Shown here: piece by piece, positions 19,822 to 29,470 of the stretch
How positions within the stretch are numbered: position 1 is the first letter of the stretch
Layout of the letters: each line of letters opens with the position of its first letter
NCBI GenBank assembly: GCA_021613535.1
Contig: CP075493.1
Location: 9,424,001 to 9,488,000, forward strand
Length of the DNA: 64,000 bases
Reading direction: 5' to 3'
DNA from: Adineta vaga
Lineage: Eukaryota; Animalia; Rotifera
The notes under the pieces: model-generated
What the model was told of the DNA's origin: nothing
Database searches by the model: none
What the model saw: only the letters and a program-made list of their open reading frames with translations
Made by a program: the position numbers and the translations under genes

Positions 19822-21917
19822 TTGAAATTTCGACCTTACAACAGGCGTATTCTGTTGCTTCACTAAAAGTCTAGAAAGATATATACCAAGCAATCTTTTA
19901 TCTAGAATTGAACAGTAGAATTAAATCATGGCGAGATATTAATTACATATAGAATTCTGCAATCAATAATAGAATCTTATAATGATGACAATTTTGCTAT
20001 CTATTTTTCTGCATTTTACTAATGATCAGATAAGAAAATAAAAATATGTACCTAACAATTTATCAAATGATTTGATTGTTTCATGTTGTTGCGTTGATTT
20101 ATATAATGAAAGATAACTATAAAACAGAAAGAAGACTCATATTTTGAAAAGTACGCTTTAACTATCACGATCATTATTATGTCCCTAATATCGACCATCT
20201 ATACGATGAATAATCAACATAAAACATCGTGATACACTTAATATTCATCATTATCATTGTATTTTCTTATCCATCAATCAATAGAAAGAAAACAAAGAAA
20301 AAAAATAAATCACCTTATAGTTGAATTAGTCCTTGGAAAAAGAAATATAATCGATTCATTACTTATTGCACTGATGTCGTACAATTCTTTGCATTAATTG
20401 GGACTCACCGTATAATCGAACTCGTCTCATAGACAATGTTACGAGTTTCAATCAACCGCTGTATAAGTCCAGAAGTAAACATATATTTGTAAAAACTAAT
20501 TTTTCAAACTAAAGAAAAAATATACGATTGAAATAATCTGATGAGAAATACATTCTTCCTCTTGTTAAATATGCGTTTATTTACTGTATGTTTGCTTCAA
20601 TGTACCCTATAGTCTTCTGTGATAGTTTTTTTTTCTCCAACATTTTTTTTTCTCATATAGATCGTTACGTATTAACGATAATGTTCTGGTTGACTGAACT
20701 ATCGAATCAATATACAAGTACATAAAACTATACTTTAATATAATATTTCATCATTTGCAAACATATGTGATGAGATATTTTTCGTTTACTGAATGAGTTA
20801 TAACTATATCTTCTGTCTTTTTCTATTTCATTGACAAGCATGCATATTATAAAAACGTTGTTACGTATGGATAGATATAGGAGTATTGTACTCTACGGGT
20901 TTTCGCAAAAAAATAAAAGAAACGTATATCAGATGAAGTGATTTTATTGATGACGAATTTTGTTTTTGTAAATCATAATTGCATTCATTCTGCTGATGAA
21001 TGTAATATTAAAAAGACATTTATCATTGTCATTACAGTGATTAAAAAAATAGATAGACGTAGAACGTCAAATAAATATTGATCGAGGTTTACTTGAAGTC
21101 TAGCAAAAGTATTAAGAAAACGAATACTATTACACATAATTAAAAATGTATACAAACAGAAAGCAAGAAATTAACAATAATGTTTCAATATATCTCTCAA
21201 AAAGTAGTTCTTATCAATTGAACACAATGAATTAACGTTGTATTGAATCATATCGTTTATTTAGAGGCAGTGATAGAGTTCTTTCATTTATTTAAACATA
21301 TGTGAAATGTACCTTTGACATTTCTTTGTGTTCTCTTTCATTGATTTCATCATCATCATCATTAGCGTAAGTAAAATCTTTCAAATAATCTCTATGACAG
21401 AAAATGTTTTTTCGCATAAAATTGATATAATCACCAATATATTAGAACTCGAGATGTACCAACGTTAATATTCAATACTTTTCATACTTTTTAACTCTGG
21501 GTACATTTTCAATATTACATCATTATAAAGATACACTCTTCATTTTTGTTTCAAGGCAAACTCATTGTATTTTCAAATGATTTCTTATTATCTTTCATTT
21601 ATCATGGGAAAACAAAATACTTCTAAAAAAACTTGAATCGAACAAACTATAATTGAGGAAAGGAAATTTCATATTATCATATGCTATATAACTGTTCAAT
21701 TAATTATTAATATGAAGTTATGATACGTACGAAAATTTATTTTAATTATTAAAAAGACGTCAGAAGAAAAGTACAATATTTAAATCAATTTCGTTTTCTC
21801 TCTCGCAATAGATACAGATAAACAATCTGTGAAATGAAGGACATTTTGTTTGCTTTTTTTGTTGCTCATTTTTCTCACCTTGAATCATTATAATAATTAC
21901 AGTTAATTAGTTTGCAT

Positions 21918-22893
21918 TTAATAATACGTTCTTTGAGGAAGATAGGAATATGGTTGCATAGGTTGAATAGATAATGGTGCATAAGGATTGATTAAATTTG
22001 AAAAAAGATTTTTAGTATTATCATCAAAATAAGCATAATCATCACGATCAAATTCTCCATCACGAAATGTTTGAACAATAAGATTATAAAATTCATCAAG
22101 TAAACGTTGAATTGTTTCATCAAATAATTGTTCACGATTAGGTGTCCATTCAAATGAATTAAAATCATCAGTTGATTTATGTTTTAAAAAATTTGGTATG
22201 CCTAAATAAGGCATTCGGCCACGATCTTGTCGACGTTTATTAAATAATTGTTCAATTTCACCTAGTTTATATAAATATTGTTTTTTCGTTGTTTGAGATA
22301 ATTCTTCAACATCAACGTGTGTACCAATTGGAATTGTTAACCAATCTTTATTCATATAAAGTGAAACAAGAACAATTTCAACAAGTTTTTGTTCTGTTGG
22401 ATGCATTGGTGCTGTATGATCCGATGAATTCGGTCGCCAACGCATACAATCAGTCATTTGTCCTTGACCATTAAATGTAAAGACAAGACCAACGAGATTA
22501 ATACGATGTGTACCAAATAAAGTACGTATTAAATCACGATAAACATCTTCTTGTCCTGCAAACGTATTATGAATTTGATGAATAAGAATATCACCCGTTT
22601 TAATACGTAACATTGCATCATTAAGAACAAAATCTGTTTGCCCATCCACAGAATAAATTAATAGACCAGCATGTACACGTGATGGATGATATTTATTTGA
22701 CATTGGAAGTATTCGTACTTGATTAATATCAAGCATAGCTTGATTACTATTGGAATCTGTATCGGGTGCTATGACTGCAAAATTAAGACCTAAAAATGTC
22801 GCAAATTTGTGATTATTTATAAGAAATAACATATTCTTCAATGATTGGATATATTATTTATTACTAACCTTCGGTAACAATATTCGAATACAT
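21918..22893 (-). CDS. Hypothetical ~295-aa protein, unknown family
   Basis: Short exon MYSNIVTE (ATG 22893) spliced to a long open exon GLNFAVIAPDTD..LPQRTYY*; globular-looking composition; no domain recognised. Confidence 0.75.
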
Positions 22894-23856
22894 TCGATAT
22901 GTATTATGATCAGCTAGTGTATCTTGAAGTAGCTGAAGATTTTGCATAAGACGTAACAACATGATGTTTGTTTATTTTCGTTTTGACAAAAACTATCGTG
23001 CCGATAGAAAATGTATGAAATATATTTTCGTTTTCTATTTTTCTTATTCACCCGTGACAATAATGATATGGATAGAAATATGCAATAATTGGTCAATTTA
23101 TATTCGAGAAGAAAAAAAAAACTGAGACGAAGATACCCAATAAAGATTACAAAGAAAAAAAAGAAATAAAAAGCCAATGAATACAGCAGTAGAATACAAC
23201 ATAAAATATAAGACGTTAAACAAAAACCAGTCTTGATCTTAAGAATTTCCTCTGTGTTTTTTTCTTTCTTCGGAGATCATGGCATTTTCGTAATTAATTC
23301 AGTGAAATAAATAGAAAAGAGAGAGAGAGTGTGTGTGAAGGAGAAAAGAAGATCACATTTGAGATTTTGTTTTTCTTTATTTTAAATAATGATTAGAATG
23401 ATAATAAGGAAGAATAAAATAGTTATGATGATAATACATATGGAACATTGGCAATGAGTTCGAGTGCGATGTCTCTAAATAAAGAAAAATATAACTTCGA
23501 AGAACGTTAATTCACTTTGAGATTATCTTAATTAAAAAAGTTTGTATTCGAGAAAGATTGAGAGGGAGAATATCAATGATCAAGAACGGATAAAAACCTA
23601 AGCTAAGTTGTTTAGTAAAAGAGAGAGATCTTATTCATAGTAGATTATTAAACATTCAATCCTGCATACACATGATTAATCGATCAAAAGAAAGTTTGGA
23701 AATGATTGTATAAATTCTTCTTTTCGTGTTTTAATAACAGTGAGAAATAGAATTTCTGCAAAGGTTTAAGTTCACGGGATTATTGTCAAGGATAACAGAA
23801 ATGATTCTATGAATAGAACTATTCAAATATACAAAAGCATTTTTGATACTAACCCA

Positions 23857-25338
23857 TTAATCGTATCTTTCACTTTTTCAATGTTAAAACCAAAACCAAT
23901 ATAATAATAGCAAGAATAACCAGTAGAACTGTAACTAATATGAACTTTTTACGTCTTGCAGAACTCTTCAAATATAGAATAAAAGAGAAAAATATAAATG
24001 CAAAATATGAATAAAGCTTTTTAAACTAAAAAAAAAGCAACCTGATAAGTTATAGCTTTTGTTAAATGTTGATTGCCTTGTGTGACATTCACTTCAGTAC
24101 TGATTATATGTTGATCAATAGAGTCTAGAAATATGCAGCAAGGTTTCATTAGTTAGTTTGTAAATAATATGCACCAATTCCTTTCTTTTTATGTATATTA
24201 ACTTTTCGAACTCCAATTAATAAAACATTCTCTATATCTTTTCGAAATCAGTTTAGCAGATTAATAGCAGTAAGATAGAATGAAAAATGACACCTGAAAG
24301 GTCTGAGCTTGTGCAACTTCCTGTGCACCGCGATGTGTATGATCAACGGCTACTTCAACATGATTTTGAATGGAATCTTAATAAATATGTTCTGTTTTAT
24401 TCATATCTATAGCTTGTTTAGTGTTTTATTTTGTTAATCTACTTACCAATAACACCACCTTGTTCATGAACAAGTTTAGCAACGTCTTTGAATAATTCGT
24501 TTACTTCAACAATATTTGTCTAAATGATAAAGTGAATCATTAAGTATTTCGAAATCTTTTCACAGAAGAATCAATGAATTACCTCAAGTTCTCGTAATTG
24601 TTCATCACGTTCTCTCAATGCTCTCATGTCTACTTCTTGTTCAATTGGTAGAACAGCTTGTTGCTGTAATGGATCATATGTTGGTGTTGAAACGAAATTG
24701 TCTGTAAATGGTGAATCTGATATTCCTTGTTGACGAAATGAAATAGCTCGTGCACGATCAAGACTTTCTTTTTCTTTTCGTGCTCCAATACGTTGTGCTT
24801 CTTGAAAACGATTTAATGTTGCTAAATATTGTTTTGGTAAATTTTCTGTTAATTGTTTTTTACGTCTCTACACAAGAAAGAAAACAATTCAATAGTTCTT
24901 TTCATCAAATGAGTTAAACCTGATCGGCTTCAGTTAACACACGAGTATTATTGAGTTCTTGTAATGCATCATTGGTTTGTTGCATTAAAGTTTTGGTTTC
25001 ATTTTGTAGACGATGACTAAAAGAAAAAGAAAAAAAGAATTCTTAGTTACTTTTCTATTCTTTCTTTTATTGATTTACTAGCGTTCACGTAATTGTTCAC
25101 TATCTTCTGGAGTACCTAATTTATGGACGAGTTTTTCAAGATCCGTTGCTATGAATAAATAAATAAATAAACAATAATAATAAAAAGATTGATTAGTTTA
25201 TTTAACTGACCATTATTACTAATCTTTGTGAGATTAGTTGAAATTGCATTGTGTAAACGTTGAAAATCACTTGCACTTGCCACTAAAATAAACGAATATG
25301 ATAAAAGAAAAATATCGTATTTAAATCCTATTCTAACT
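23857..25338 (-). CDS. Syntaxin-7/12-like endosomal Qa-SNARE with two alternative SNARE exons
   Basis: Habc region (DFQRLHNAISTNLTKISNN..KLGTPEDSEQLRER), SNARE motif (RERDEQLRELETNIVEVNELFKDVAKLVHEQGGVIDSI), C-terminal TM anchor (RRKKFILVTVLLVILAIIILVLVL). Confidence 0.92.
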
Positions 25339-26393
25339 TCTTGTGGACCAAGTATCAATACAATCGTCGATCTAGAAGAAAATGACCAAATTTCATTGAA
25401 GTTATTTCAAATATTATTCAATCATCATTCTTCATGGATTTAAGTATTCAACACAAGATAAATTAATTATAAAATCAAAAGAAAAAGCAAGCAACCAAAA
25501 TAAGCAATAAAAGGAAATAATGGAAAGATTGAGTCACACTTAGGCATGTTTCATAATCTCACTTTTATTAATTCGTCATCCGTTGTATCAAACATTATAT
25601 TTTTTCCTACAAATGATCAAATGCGTCAGTTAGTTTATAGAAAAAAATCTTTATGAGTCATGTTGTGTATTGAAACATGACTTATATAATGATCTAAGAC
25701 GAACAAACAAATGTTTGTTTTTCAATACTCACTCTCGTAGCTGTGTAATAAATATATAGAAATAAAAAGAAAATGATCTGTTTAGTGTCTTTTTTTGTCC
25801 AATGACTCATTCAGTTACATATTTACGAGGGAGCCACAAGACTTATTTACCTGTCAACATCGAATCTAGGATTTGTTTGAATAGAATTTGTAAAATTAGA
25901 CAGAGAAGAAATGAGTTTTATTTGATAGATTCAAGAAAAACAACTCCCTAATCTTTAGTTATGCTCGAATCAGTGACATCTATATCATTAGTATGATGAA
26001 TGTAGATGAAAGATGGCGTTTATTTTCTATTAAGAATTTAAAAAAAGGAATCGAAAGTATGTTTTAATATTGAATAAAAAAAGAAAGCATTTCTTTTCGT
26101 TAAAAACAAAAATGACTTTAAACCAATGAAAACGAAAATGGTTATCCCAACTAAAATACAAGTAACTTTCTTGATGAAAAAATAATATTTCCTATTTCAA
26201 AATGTAGATACAATATAATTGATTTATATCTATTAATTCAGTTCAGAAAAAAAAACAATTACATCCTTTCGATAACACCCGCTGATTATTGTTTATCGTC
26301 GAAATAGGATGATACGACTCGATATTCTAAATAGTCACATTTTCTTTTAGATTTTCTCTTTGTGTGAAAAATAACGACGATTATAGATCAAAC

Positions 26394-28664
26394 ATGCAAA
26401 ATATTCGTCAGTTAATTGCCACACAACGTTCTGTATCCGTTTGGAAGATTAATTATTTATTAAGACGATGTCTTACACTCTCCACTTCAACAAGTTTTAA
26501 TCCAGCCAATTTCACTATCAACTCGTAAATATACGAAGTTTTTCAAAATTAAAAACTCATCTATCTTTCGATATTTCAGTTCATCATTAACTCTAGTCGA
26601 TTCAAACTTCTCATCTTGTATAAATGGTCGATTATTATCAGGAACAAAATGTGGTCTAACCACTATTCATCGACATCAACCTATTCGTTATGCTTCATCT
26701 GGTAGTTTACCGGCTCATACAAAAATAAACCTACCTGCATTATCACCTACCATGGAAACTGGAACTTTACGTTCGTGGTCGAAAAAAGAAGGAGATAAAA
26801 TAGTGGAAGGTAAATATCACTCGTCAATGTTACTTTGAAATCTATGTATGAATTCATTTTTCAGGAGATATATTAGCCGAAATTGAAACCGATAAAGCAA
26901 CATTAGGATTTGAATCAGGAGATGAAGGATTTTTGGCAAAAATTCTTATTCCTGGTGGTAGTAAAGATGTCCCTGTTGGTAAAGTAAGTGACAATGAAAC
27001 ATTATTATTATCTTGATTGTTAGCAATGCATTCTACATTTAGTTATGTGCGATTATTGTGGAGAAAGAAGAAGATGTAGCTGCATTTAAAGATTTCAAAG
27101 ATGATGCTAGTGATGCACCAACCAAAGAAAAATCTTCCGATGAAAAACCAGCTCCAGTTGAAAAGAAAGAAAAAGAAACGACGAAAAAAGATGATTCAAC
27201 CAGTAAAACAGAGGAACAACCAAGCAAGCAGAAAACGAAAACAACTAGTTCAACTCAAGGTGATCGAGTAGTTGCTTCTCCTCTCGCTCGTAAACTTGCC
27301 GAAGAAAAAGGCATTGATTTAACAGTAAATAATCATTCTCATAGTGATATGTCATATTATAATTAATACATATATATATGTATCGTCTAGTCTGTTCAAG
27401 GATCTGGTCCAAATGGTCGCATTATTGCTGAAGATGTTGAGAAATTTCTTAAAGACGGTGGTGCAAAAGCAGGTGTTAAAAAAGTCACAGATCAACAAGC
27501 TACTTCAGCTAGAAGCGGAGGAAGAAGAGAGAAAGAAACGTCAGCACGTACAGGTGGTTATGATGATGAACAAGTATCCGATATTCGAGCGGTAATTTTA
27601 TATTATGAAAAAATAAGAACCGAACTGTTTCATATTTATTTTTCTCAAGGAACATGCGCGTCGTGTCACTGAATCTAAGACAACTATTCCTCATTATTAT
27701 TTAACAATTGAAATTGAAGTCGATGAAATACTTAAGTATAAAAAGTTCTATCTACGAAATTTCTTAATGATAAACGATTGTTTTAGATTACGCGGAAAAT
27801 TGAATGATTTACTTGCACCAAAAACAAAAACCACTAAAGATAAATCTCTTGGTATTACATTAAATGATTTTATTATAAAAGCAGCTGCTCTTGCTTGTAA
27901 AAAACGACCAGAAACAAATAGCATCTGGATGGAAAAATCTATACGACAGTAAGATATTTTGTTCTTTTTTTTATCTACTTTTTATTTCTACATTTAAAAC
28001 ATCTATTAGATATGAAACAGTTGATATCAATGTAGCAATAAATACAGATGCTGGCATCCTTCTAACACCTATTTTATATAATGCTGATCAAAAGGTAATT
28101 TTGAAGTTTGCTATTAAACATATACAACAATCATCATTGGTTTTAATTTAGGGTGTTTCAACAATTAATAAAGAAATATCGCAATTGAATGAAAAAGCTA
28201 ATGGTGGAAAACTAAACGATAATGAACTTGAAGTAAAGAGAGATATTAAAATATTGATTTTAATGATATATGGTATTGATTTTTAGATGGGAACATTTAC
28301 AATTTCAAATCTAGGAATGTATGGTGTAACTAATTTTAGTCCTATTATTTATCCTCAACAAGTAAATTTGAGTTTAATGAAATGAATAAATATTTCAACG
28401 TTTTTATTTAGTCAGCGAATTTAGCCATTGGTAATATAGAAACAAGAATTTTACCTTCACCAGATGCACTTAAAGGGTAAAAATTCGAATTTTTTTATGG
28501 TAATAATGATTTGTTTTTATTCCTTATTGATTAGTTATCGTCAAGTATCTATTCTTAATGTGACATTAGCATGTGATCATCGTGTTATTGATGGTGCAAT
28601 TGGTGCACAATGGTTACAAGAATTTAAACAATTTCTTGAAAATCCAGGCTCGATGATCTTATAG
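26394..28664 (+). CDS. DLAT: Pyruvate dehydrogenase E2 (dihydrolipoamide acetyltransferase), single lipoyl domain
   Basis: [19 protein letters not shown] (lipoyl Lys), [24 protein letters not shown] (subunit-binding domain), [19 protein letters not shown] catalytic motif. Confidence 0.92.
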
Positions 28665-28879
28665 ACTCTTTTTTAGGTTATATTTTGTCTTGTATTCTCT
28701 CCTTATATACCTTTTCCTAAACATTATGATTCTCTAACTTAGTTTCATGATAAATCCAACTTATTATTATTATTTTTGTCGATTTTAGTCAAGCAAATCT
28801 AACAAAATACTTCACTTTTGTCCGGATAATATTTCTCCTTTGGAAGTTCGTTTTTAGATTTTGTTTTTTTTTCGTTGAT

Positions 28880-29470
28880 ATGGTTTTAAATCATCTTTCA
28901 CGTAGTCTTTATACTAAACTACATCCTTTATTAACTGCAAATATTCAGACACGCTGTTTATTAGCACGAAATTATCATGAAAAAGTAATTGATCATTATG
29001 AAAATCCACGAAATGTTGGTTCATTCGATAAATCTAATGATGATATTGGTACTGGTCTTGTCGGCGCACCAGCATGTGGTGATGTGATGAAATTACAAGT
29101 AAGTTTATTTTTTCACTGCGATTTGTTTGTTTTTCATTTTCAATTGTTGACTAGATTAAAGTTGATGAAAATGGAAAAATCACTGATGCAAAATTTAAAA
29201 CATTTGGTTGTGGTTCTGCAATTGCTTCATCTTCATTAGCAACAGAATGGATTAAAGGAAAGTCAATTAAAGAAGCAAATTCAATTAAAAATCAAGATAT
29301 TGCGAAAGAACTATGTTTACCACCAGTTAAACTTCATTGTTCAAGTAAAAGAAACTTACGTAGTTTATTTGTACACTAAGTATTTGTTTTTAGTGCTTGC
29401 TGAAGATGCAATCAAAGCAGCAATCAACGATTACAATACAAAAAAGAATAAACAACATAAAGATAAATGA
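28880..29470 (+). CDS. ISCU: Mitochondrial Fe-S cluster scaffold ISCU
   Basis: [32 protein letters not shown]|[47 protein letters not shown]. Confidence 0.97.

What the first reader, a model, noticed from the sequence alone, without database searches (positions are those of the whole stretch)
24042..24376. Mutually exclusive exons swap the C-terminal half of the syntaxin-7/12 SNARE motif
Seen: two tandem minus-strand exons of exactly 83 nt (24294-24376 and 24042-24124), each flanked by AG and GT, starting in phase 1 and ending in phase 0. They encode DSIQNHVEVAVDHTHRGAQEVAQAQTFQ and DSIDQHIISTEVNVTQGNQHLTKAITYQ. Including both, or neither, shifts the frame. The hydrophobic layer pattern is kept while nucleotide similarity is low, pointing to an old, maintained duplication. 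Established: comparable SNARE-motif exon swaps exist in SNAP-25a/b and syntaxin-3A/B. I know of none for an endosomal syntaxin. Inference: one gene gives two Qa-SNAREs with different partner or zippering properties. Neither exon appears in the ORF track.
Basis: partly seen in the sequence, partly recalled or inferred. Interest (0 to 1): 0.8.

Follow-up and report, generated by a model that had tools for sequence, protein, structure and literature searches.

The report
Alternative SNARE exons in rotifer syntaxin
A bdelloid rotifer gene for an endosomal membrane-fusion protein (syntaxin 7/12 type) uses one or the other of two duplicated 83-base exons, never both, so it makes two proteins that differ only in the membrane-near half of the fusion helix; both exons are transcribed and are kept in at least six rotifer species.

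Summary
On the minus strand, exons 24376-24294 (A) and 24124-24042 (B) are each 83 nt with AG/GT, start in phase 1 and end in phase 0. They encode layers +2 to +8 of the SNARE motif of a syntaxin-7/12/13-like Qa-SNARE of Adineta vaga.

Spliced RNA contigs from two independent studies contain either upstream exon-A-last exon or upstream exon-B-last exon. None joins A to B or skips both. By contig depth B is about 73% and A about 27%. A third study shows only B.

Both exons are intact at the syntenic gene in A. ricciae, A. steineri, Rotaria socialis and Rotaria sp. Silwood1, and both isoforms are modelled in R. magnacalcarata. Extra duplicates lost one exon each: A decayed in an R. sordida copy and in the diverged Rotaria paralogue, B decayed in an extra A. 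steineri copy. An acanthocephalan and a bryozoan have a single 83-nt exon.

Exon A changes amino acids 4-6 times faster than the rest of the gene but keeps its length, frame, splice sites and layer residues. A different function for each isoform is inferred, not shown.

This is a new member of a known kind (compare SNAP-25a/b and syntaxin-3A/B). I found no prior report. Two unchecked earlier notes of this scan mention exclusive exons in syntaxin-1 of the same genome.

The parts
24294..24376 (-). Alternative exon A (83 nt). It encodes SNARE layers +2..+8 in a divergent version and is the minor form.
   Evidence: AG/GT and frame. Spliced joints 24447>24376 and 24294>23965 in runs X1 and X5. Pfam SNARE 16.1 bits. 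Orthologous intact exons in L008, L010, L014, L015, L018.
24042..24124 (-). Alternative exon B (83 nt). It encodes SNARE layers +2..+8 in the canonical syntaxin-7-like version and is the major form.
   Evidence: AG/GT and frame. Joints 24447>24124 and 24042>23965 in X1, X5 and X6. Pfam SNARE 29.2 bits. Aligns to syntaxin-7 chain 1gl2_B.
24125..24293 (-). 169-nt intron between A and B. It carries a CTAAC branch-like site about 25-30 nt before B and two conserved clusters of YGCY motifs.
   Evidence: Alignment of five species. YGCY count 3-5 against 0.6-1.1 expected in all five. No A-to-B joint seen in RNA contigs.
24447..24519 (-). Constitutive exon (73 nt) with SNARE layers up to +1, including the zero-layer Gln (HEQG). 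It ends in phase 1.
   Evidence: joints.
24583..24867 (-). Constitutive 285-nt exon (95 aa): end of the Habc domain, linker and N-terminal half of the SNARE motif.
   Evidence: Pfam Syntaxin_2 24.3 bits. Joints. 38 relatives found.
23854..23965 (-). Last coding exon: juxtamembrane basic stretch, transmembrane anchor, stop codon at 23872-23870.
   Evidence: joints 23965 and 23854.
23475..23853 (-). 379-nt intron in the 3' UTR, starting 16 nt after the stop codon.
   Evidence: Joint 23474/23854 in X1, X5 and X6. A GT donor 11-16 nt after the stop is present in the other bdelloid loci.
24920..25595 (-). 5' coding exons: ATG 25595 to 25563; 25371-25338; 25282-25211; 25148-25079; 25016-24920. They encode the N-terminal extension and the Habc domain.
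   Evidence: Reading. Joints 25563/25371, 25338/25282 and 24920/24867. The two joints at 25211/25148 and 25079/25016 fall in stretches the reads tool masked as repeats; they are inferred from contig record lengths. The CDS sums to 281 codons, matching the 280-aa orthologues.

Best explanation
This is a genuine pair of mutually exclusive exons, made by a tandem duplication of an ancestral 83-nt exon, in the main syntaxin-7/12/13-type Qa-SNARE gene of the bdelloid rotifer Adineta vaga. Every mature mRNA carries A or B. [quoted passage not shown] They differ in the 28 residues that form layers +2 to +8, the membrane-proximal half that drives the last steps of zippering. Shown here: the exon anatomy, use of each exon in spliced RNA, absence of A+B or skipped forms in the contigs, and conservation in other species. 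Exclusivity is at least enforced by reading frame, because both or neither gives an early stop. Removal of those products by nonsense-mediated decay, helped by the conserved 3'-UTR intron that places a splice junction downstream of such stops, is inferred. B is the canonical, slowly evolving, dominant form. A is a minor form whose share differs between samples and whose surface residues evolve fast while its core layer residues stay fixed. [quoted passage not shown] That could change partner SNAREs or regulators, or the fusion step served. The duplication arose in the bdelloid lineage before the split of the two old paralogues. The syntenic main gene kept both exons, and extra copies each lost one.
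For: Anatomy and frames. RNA: in X1 (2024 study) and X5 (2013 study) two separate short contigs bridge upstream exon-A-last exon and upstream exon-B-last exon. Depths are 33.8 against 92.5 in X1 and 5.2 against 13.4 in X5, and in X1 they sum to about the depth of the flanking contig (134). X6 has one 1142-nt contig with B only. There is no 24294>24124 joint and no 24447>23965 joint. There is only one main-type gene in the assembly. Conservation: both exons are 83 nt with AG/GT in Rotaria sp. Silwood1 L008, R. socialis L014, A. steineri L015 and A. ricciae L018. NCBI models of both isoforms exist in R. magnacalcarata, R. socialis and A. steineri. These loci are syntenic, next to an SMN-Tudor gene and a 2-oxoacid dehydrogenase E2 gene. 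What neutral decay looks like: the A exon in R. sordida L009 lost its AG and gained a TAA although L009 is only 17-19% diverged from L008 at the DNA level. The A remnant in L011 has a stop and no donor. The B exon in A. steineri L010 lost both splice sites and has a deletion. Constraint on A: non-synonymous change is 0.16-0.35 per site against 0.035-0.08 in constitutive exons, while synonymous change is like the baseline, so the ratio is below 1 in all ten pairs. Layer positions are 76% identical against 50% elsewhere, reached by 98 of 5000 random position sets. Both full-length isoforms pass Pfam's SNARE cut-off (53.8 and 45.4 bits). Age: the L011-type groups with the contig-4-type clade (SH-aLRT 93) and an AU test rejects it as a recent Rotaria duplicate (p 0.022). 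Single exon in an acanthocephalan and a bryozoan.
Against: All RNA evidence is from assembled contigs, not raw reads. Rare A+B or skipped forms would be dropped, depths are rough, and the absence of A in X6 may be an assembly effect. All 13 transcript-like ORFs of relatives in the protein collection carry B, although A forms could be hidden inside 90% clusters. Exon A evolves fast (dN/dS 0.3-0.9 on only 27 codons), scores below Pfam's cut-off on its own, and has been lost at least three times, so selection on it is weak or lineage-dependent. No functional difference between the isoforms has been tested. NMD in rotifers and any role for the YGCY motifs are assumptions. The placement of the L011-type rests on about 220 columns and moderate support.
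Confidence: 0.8

Rival explanations
1. Exon A is a leftover of an old exon duplication that the spliceosome still picks up as noise. It makes a tolerated, in-frame protein with no function of its own and is on its way to being lost.
For: A is the minor form and is not seen in run X6. All 13 transcript-like ORFs of relatives carry B. Amino-acid change in A is 4-6 times that of the rest of the gene and dN/dS reaches 0.9 in some pairs. A alone falls below Pfam's SNARE cut-off. A has decayed in R. sordida L009 and in the L011-type, and is gone from the Adineta contig-4-type genes.
Against: A keeps exactly 83 nt, an open frame, AG and GT in six loci from two families whose synonymous sites differ by 30-60%. 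Where it is unused it picked up a stop and lost a splice site within a much shorter divergence (L009 against L008). Its layer residues are conserved above its other positions. One duplicate (L010) kept A and let B decay, which is hard to explain if A were useless. About 27% usage in two studies is high for noise.
Confidence: 0.14
2. The A and B transcripts come from two different gene copies or haplotypes, each using only one exon, rather than from alternative splicing of one gene.
For: Bdelloids carry diverged gene copies. The assembly is a collapsed haploid representation, so the second haplotype was not inspected. Single-exon copies do exist in other species.
Against: The sequenced locus has both exons intact. 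The only other close copy in the assembly (contig 4) is 67% identical and has no A exon. The A and B contigs match the window without mismatches and share identical flanks (table 8). The depth ratio is about 1:3, not 1:1, and is similar in two studies.
Confidence: 0.03
3. The two exons are not strictly exclusive. A+B and skipped mRNAs are made in quantity and yield truncated, anchor-less syntaxin fragments that act as regulators.
For: The 169-nt intron between A and B has a normal branch-like site and is long enough to be spliced, so nothing structural forbids joining A to B. Contigs drop rare variants (notes).
Against: No such joint appears in any of three runs with depth up to 139. Both products stop early, more than 55 nt before a downstream junction, which is the usual condition for decay.
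Confidence: 0.03

Closest known systems
Syntaxin-3A/3B of vertebrates (alternative exons 9-10)
   Same: [quoted passage not shown] The idea that the swap changes SNARE partners is the same.
   Different: Syntaxin-3 is a plasma-membrane, exocytic syntaxin, and its swap also replaces the transmembrane domain. Here only 28 residues (layers +2..+8) change and the anchor is shared. The duplication is independent, and bdelloid-specific among the genomes sampled.
SNAP-25a/b (duplicated exon 5, mutually exclusive)
   Same: Tandem duplication of one exon inside a SNARE motif, with mutually exclusive use, yields two proteins that differ in a few residues of the helix (PMC2581893).
   Different: SNAP-25 is a Qbc-SNARE of regulated exocytosis. 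Its two exons differ in only 9 residues, whereas here about two thirds of the 28 residues differ. It is a vertebrate event unrelated to this one.
unc-64 / syntaxin-1 and syntaxin-2 alternative last exons
   Same: Alternative 3' exons of a syntaxin are chosen through an intronic RNA-binding-protein site (UNC-75/CELF) (PMC4946901). Conserved intronic motifs flank the alternative exons here too.
   Different: Those swaps change the membrane anchor, not the SNARE layers. The motif there is UGUGUG-like, while here the enriched motif is YGCY and no binding protein has been tested.
Syntaxin 7 and syntaxin 12/13 (Pep12-type endosomal Qa-SNAREs)
   Same: Domain order (Syntaxin_2 Habc, SNARE motif with zero-layer Gln, C-terminal anchor) and best matches to solved structures 2dnx, 1gl2 and 2nps. 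The 83-nt exon layout is shared with an acanthocephalan and a bryozoan orthologue.
   Different: I found no report of exclusive SNARE-motif exons in this family. Vertebrates cover early and late endosomal roles with separate genes.
Partitioning of alternative exons between gene duplicates (subfunctionalisation of isoforms)
   Same: Extra copies kept one of the two alternatives and let the other decay: B-only in R. sordida L009 and the L011-type, A-only in A. steineri L010.
   Different: The syntenic parent gene still keeps both exons, at least in A. steineri (L015), so the partition is not complete. Expression of the single-exon copies was not tested.

Membership tests
Syntaxin 7/12/13 (Pep12-type) Qa-SNARE | N-terminal three-helix Habc domain of the Syntaxin_2 type | tested here: met
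   The window's 95-aa exon hits PF14523 at 24.3 bits, partial because it is one exon. Full-length orthologues P0068 and P0072 score 77.6 and 75.3 bits. The Habc part matches the syntaxin-12 structure 2dnx.
Syntaxin 7/12/13 (Pep12-type) Qa-SNARE | SNARE motif with glutamine in the zero layer | tested here: met
   The upstream exon reads ..HEQG.. at the position aligned to the zero-layer Gln of syntaxin 7. PF05739 is matched by each alternative exon and by both full-length isoforms.
Syntaxin 7/12/13 (Pep12-type) Qa-SNARE | C-terminal single transmembrane anchor after a basic juxtamembrane stretch | tested here: met
   The last exon encodes a basic stretch (ARRKK) followed by about 22 hydrophobic residues and a stop. 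This was read from the sequence only; no predictor was run.
Syntaxin 7/12/13 (Pep12-type) Qa-SNARE | Closer to syntaxin 7/12/13 than to other syntaxin subfamilies | tested here: met
   For orthologue P0068 the top three solved chains are syntaxin-12, syntaxin-7 and syntaxin-13 (E 9e-14 to 2e-12). Syntaxin-1A, -17 and Tlg2 rank lower. This was tested on the orthologue, because the window's spliced model was not joined.
Syntaxin 7/12/13 (Pep12-type) Qa-SNARE | Endosomal or lysosomal localisation and partners (Vti1, syntaxin 6/8, VAMP4/7/8 types) | not testable with these tools
   No localisation or interaction data are available for rotifers.
Mutually exclusive exon pair from tandem exon duplication | Adjacent exons of the same length and phase with homologous sequence | tested here: met
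   Both are 83 nt, phase 1 to phase 0. Both match the same Pfam SNARE profile positions, with 38 of 83 bases identical.
Mutually exclusive exon pair from tandem exon duplication | Mature transcripts contain exactly one of the two | tested here: met
   Separate spliced contigs carry A or B in X1 and X5, and B in X6. There is no A-B joint and no skipping joint. Limit: these are assembled contigs, so rare forms cannot be excluded.
Mutually exclusive exon pair from tandem exon duplication | A mechanism that prevents double inclusion or skipping | tested here: inconclusive
   Frame incompatibility is shown. Steric hindrance is unlikely, given the 169-nt intron and a branch-like CTAAC near B. No convincing competing RNA pairing was found. 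NMD was not tested.
Mutually exclusive exon pair from tandem exon duplication | Both alternatives conserved in related species | tested here: met
   Both are intact in four other species' loci, and both isoforms are modelled in a fifth.

The most novel reading that the evidence does not exclude
The two isoforms are distinct fusion machines. By splicing, bdelloids would give one endosomal Qa-SNARE two alternative C-terminal zippering halves that pair with different Qb/Qc/R partners or regulators, comparable to the syntaxin-7 versus syntaxin-12/13 division of labour in vertebrates. The choice would be regulated between physiological states (about 27% A in two studies, none detected in a third) through the conserved YGCY clusters flanking the A-B intron.
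Probability: 0.2. Interest if true: 0.7.

Novelty: new member of a known kind. Interest (0 to 1): 0.5.

Why it matters
Swapping part of a SNARE motif by exclusive exons is known for exocytic SNAREs (SNAP-25, syntaxin-3). In the literature I could search, it has not been described for an endosomal syntaxin. Here nature has isolated the variable very cleanly. Only layers +2 to +8 change, and the Habc domain, N-terminal half of the motif, linker and anchor are all shared. That makes the pair a ready-made experiment on what the membrane-proximal half of a Qa-SNARE contributes to partner choice and fusion. The reciprocal loss of A or B in extra gene copies is also a clear example of alternative exons being partitioned after gene duplication.

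There is a practical point too. Public gene models of this gene are broken at exactly this spot in several bdelloid genomes. Some put both exons in series, some read into the intron, and the A. vaga GenBank model is a 69-aa fragment. The locus needs manual annotation.

Tried and rejected
1. Competing RNA structures (docking or selector type): a repeat search over 23966-24460 gave only weak AT-rich inverted repeats. The conserved intronic GC-containing elements are same-sense, not complementary.

2. Steric hindrance: the A-B intron is 109-174 nt in five species with a CTAAC-like site near B, so splicing A to B is not physically excluded.

3. Synonymous-site constraint on exon B looked striking against the neighbouring 73-nt exon. 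Against a larger baseline of three constitutive exons it is only marginal (Fisher p 0.014-0.26) and is absent in pairs with A. ricciae. I do not rely on it.

4. A solved-structure search with exon A alone returned only a designed repeat protein, which is noise.

5. The Didymodactylos carnosus contig ends before the SNARE exons, so it gives no information.

6. Run X12 (another organism label) gave only low-depth unspliced pieces and no cross-species RNA evidence.

7. P0093 and P0090 in the A-only paralogue's cluster turned out to be fusions with an unrelated gene, and I left P0093 out of the second tree.

8. Literature searches for exclusive exons in syntaxin 7/12, and for Adineta vaga plus syntaxin, found nothing relevant.

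Exons were searched one by one by reference, and full-length database orthologues were used instead.

Full report
**What is in the sequence**

The window is AT-rich (about 30% G+C) and is part of contig 1 of a 100.8-Mb, six-contig assembly. My own data agree: the GenBank protein I4U23_003035 labelled Adineta vaga (P0064, 69 aa, on an 18.1-Mb contig) is an exact fragment of the gene read here.

On the minus strand lies a ten-exon gene. The coding exons are:
- ATG 25595 to 25563
- 25371-25338
- 25282-25211
- 25148-25079
- 25016-24920
- 24867-24583
- 24519-24447
- then either 24376-24294 (A) or 24124-24042 (B)
- then 23965-23854, with the stop at 23872-23870
- a 3'-UTR exon follows a 379-nt intron

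The coding parts sum to 281 codons, the same as the 280-aa orthologues.

**Is each exon used?**

I laid assembled contigs of four public runs on 23200-26300. Introns are removed in these contigs, so they are RNA.

In X1 (study P1, 2024) and X5 (study P2, 2013) the assembly graph splits into two short contigs of 137-138 nt. One is 26 nt of the last exon plus exon B plus 28-29 nt of the upstream exon. The other is the same flanks with exon A. Depths are 92.5 (B) and 33.8 (A) in X1, which sum to about the 134 of the flanking contig. They are 13.4 and 5.2 in X5. That gives roughly 73% B and 27% A.

In X6 (study P3) a single 1142-nt contig runs through B only. No contig joins A to B and none skips both. 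Contigs cannot show rare forms, and depth is only a rough guide, so the ratios are estimates and the absence of A in X6 is only a hint that usage varies.

Including both exons makes exon B stop at its 7th codon. Skipping both stops after five codons of the last exon. Both stops lie 62-95 nt before a downstream splice junction. The second case is covered only because of the 3'-UTR intron, whose donor position is conserved in the other bdelloid loci. Decay of such products is therefore plausible, but it is inferred.

**What the gene is**

Searched exon by exon, the 95-aa exon matches Pfam Syntaxin_2. Exon B alone passes the SNARE domain cut-off (29.2 bits) and exon A matches the same profile positions more weakly (16.1 bits). 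Exon B aligns to the syntaxin-7 chain of the endosomal SNARE complex 1gl2.

Instead I used full-length orthologues from the protein collection. R. socialis P0068 (B form) best matches the solved chains of syntaxin-12, syntaxin-7 and syntaxin-13. Both P0068 and its A-form sibling P0072 pass both Pfam domains.

The zero-layer glutamine and layer +1 lie in the shared upstream exon. The alternative exon supplies layers +2 to +8 and the last residues before the juxtamembrane basic stretch. Layer residues are I V A T G V A in A and I I T V G L A in B.

**Conservation**

An exhaustive profile-free search with the 95-aa exon and a word search with a full-length paralogue recovered bdelloid relatives. 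Several public models are broken exactly here. They read into the intron after the upstream exon (P0002), skip the SNARE exons (P0003), stop after A (P0014), or string A and B together with an invented bridge (P0046, P0071, P0073).

Fetching the genomic loci and checking exons and splice sites gave the following pattern.

| Locus | Species / copy | Exon A | Exon B |
|---|---|---|---|
| L008 | Rotaria sp. Silwood1, main gene | intact | intact |
| L014 | R. socialis, main gene | intact | intact |
| L015 | A. steineri, main gene | intact | intact |
| L018 | A. ricciae, main gene | intact | intact |
| L009 | R. sordida copy | no AG acceptor, in-frame TAA | intact |
| L010 | extra A. steineri copy | intact | both splice sites lost, internal deletion |
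| L011 | diverged Rotaria sp. Silwood1 paralogue | remnant with early stop, no donor | intact |
| L002 | A. vaga contig-4 paralogue | absent (47-nt intron) | B-like only |

Further points:
- In the four loci with both exons intact, each exon is 83 nt with AG/GT. R. magnacalcarata has models of both isoforms.
- These loci share the neighbours SMN-Tudor and a 2-oxoacid dehydrogenase E2. The A. ricciae locus is collinear with the window from 28910 to 20174.
- L009 and L010 match the main genes only over the gene body, so they are dispersed duplicates.
- The 249-nt intron of L011 holds an 83-nt remnant that is 49 of 83 identical to A-type exons. The null mean is 25.6 and the null maximum is 41 in 2000 draws.
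- The assembly has no other close copy besides contigs 1 and 4.
- The acanthocephalan Neoechinorhynchus agilis and the bryozoan Bugula neritina have the same exon layout with a single 83-nt exon and no detectable second copy.

**Age**

In a tree of the constitutive part, the window's gene sits in a main clade with all loci that carry both exons. The L011-type groups with the contig-4-type clade (SH-aLRT 93). An AU test rejects placing it with the Rotaria main genes (p 0.022).

Since L011 keeps an A-type pseudo-exon, the duplication probably predates the split of the two old paralogue lineages. It certainly predates the Adineta-Rotaria divergence. Support is moderate (about 220 columns).

**Selection**

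By Nei-Gojobori counting, exon B changes amino acids as slowly as the constitutive exons (0.03-0.08 per non-synonymous site). Exon A changes 4-6 times faster (0.16-0.35; Fisher p at most 5e-4 in all ten pairs), with synonymous change like the baseline. The ratio is below 1 in every pair (0.3-0.9), but on 27 codons and with non-independent pairs.

In A-type exons the seven layer positions are 76% identical against 50% for the other positions (98 of 5000 random position sets reach this). Thr at +5 and Ala at +8 are invariant. Taken with the rapid decay seen wherever an exon is unused, this argues that A is maintained as a working SNARE helix with a fast-changing surface. An apparent lack of synonymous change in B did not survive a larger baseline.

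**Regulation (a lead only)**

The 35 nt before exon B and a stretch 20-40 nt after exon A are conserved between the two families. YGCY motifs are enriched in the A-B intron in all five species, with 3-5 observed against 0.6-1.1 expected. No binding factor was tested. No convincing competing RNA pairing was found.

**Comparison with what is known**

[quoted passage not shown] SNAP-25a/b arise from a duplicated, mutually exclusive exon 5 (PMC2581893). unc-64 and syntaxin-2 swap their anchors under CELF control (PMC4946901).

The present case works like these but is an independent event in an endosomal Qa-SNARE, and it changes only layers +2..+8. Searches of the paper library found no report of it. 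Two earlier first-reader notes of this scan mention exclusive exon clusters in syntaxin-1 of the same genome. I did not check them.

**Verdict**

This is a new member of a known kind, of moderate interest. What remains open is the functional difference between the isoforms, how the choice is regulated, and whether out-of-frame products are made and degraded.

Noticed in passing
window 23475-23853 (minus strand): A 379-nt intron lies in the 3' UTR, starting 16 nt after the stop codon, and is spliced in three runs. A GT donor at the same distance from the stop is present in the other bdelloid loci. It would put a splice junction downstream of any premature stop in the last coding exon.
   Followed up: partly
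window 25283-25595 (minus strand): The Met codon that starts the Habc part is split A|TG by the intron 25337-25283. Translation most likely starts at the upstream ATG 25595. That adds a 22-residue N-terminal extension with a conserved acidic motif (DDEL.xIDDCIDTWS) also found in Adineta and Rotaria orthologues. Its function is unknown.
   Followed up: partly
L002:1523-1594 (contig 4 paralogue); also P0009, P0041, P0096, P0014: The contig-4-type paralogue, the diverged Rotaria paralogue and the A-only A. steineri copy have His instead of Gln at the zero layer of the SNARE motif (..HEHG.. / ..HSHG.. / ..SEHG..). That is unusual for a Qa-SNARE. The A. steineri contig-4-type protein keeps Gln.
   Followed up: no
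window 24125-24293; L008, L014, L015, L018 equivalent introns: There are conserved clusters of YGCY motifs (UGCU/CGCU) 20-40 nt after exon A and just before exon B's pyrimidine tract. They are enriched 4-8 fold over shuffles in all five species and are candidate splicing-regulator sites.
   Followed up: partly
public models P0002, P0003, P0014, P0046, P0049, P0059, P0061, P0064, P0071, P0073: Gene models of this gene in NCBI bdelloid assemblies are often wrong at the alternative exons. Errors include both exons in series with an invented bridge, read-through into introns, skipped SNARE exons and fusions with neighbouring genes. The A. vaga GenBank entry is a 69-aa fragment.
   Followed up: yes
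window 23619: Run X1 has a low-depth unspliced contig with an AGAGAG insertion in the 3'-UTR intron, probably a length polymorphism of a short AG repeat.
   Followed up: no
same genome, outside the window (earlier notes s1-489654, s1-502193): First-stage notes report clusters of mutually exclusive exons in the Habc domain of syntaxin-1 in this genome. If they are real, exon-swapping in SNARE genes may be common in A. vaga.
   Followed up: no
window 26359-28910 and 20174-23487: The neighbours of the syntaxin gene are collinear with the A. ricciae locus at 71-78% DNA identity, and the alignments run unbroken across the introns of the syntaxin gene. In the other bdelloid loci the upstream neighbours are a 2-oxoacid dehydrogenase E2 and an SMN-Tudor gene.
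   Followed up: partly
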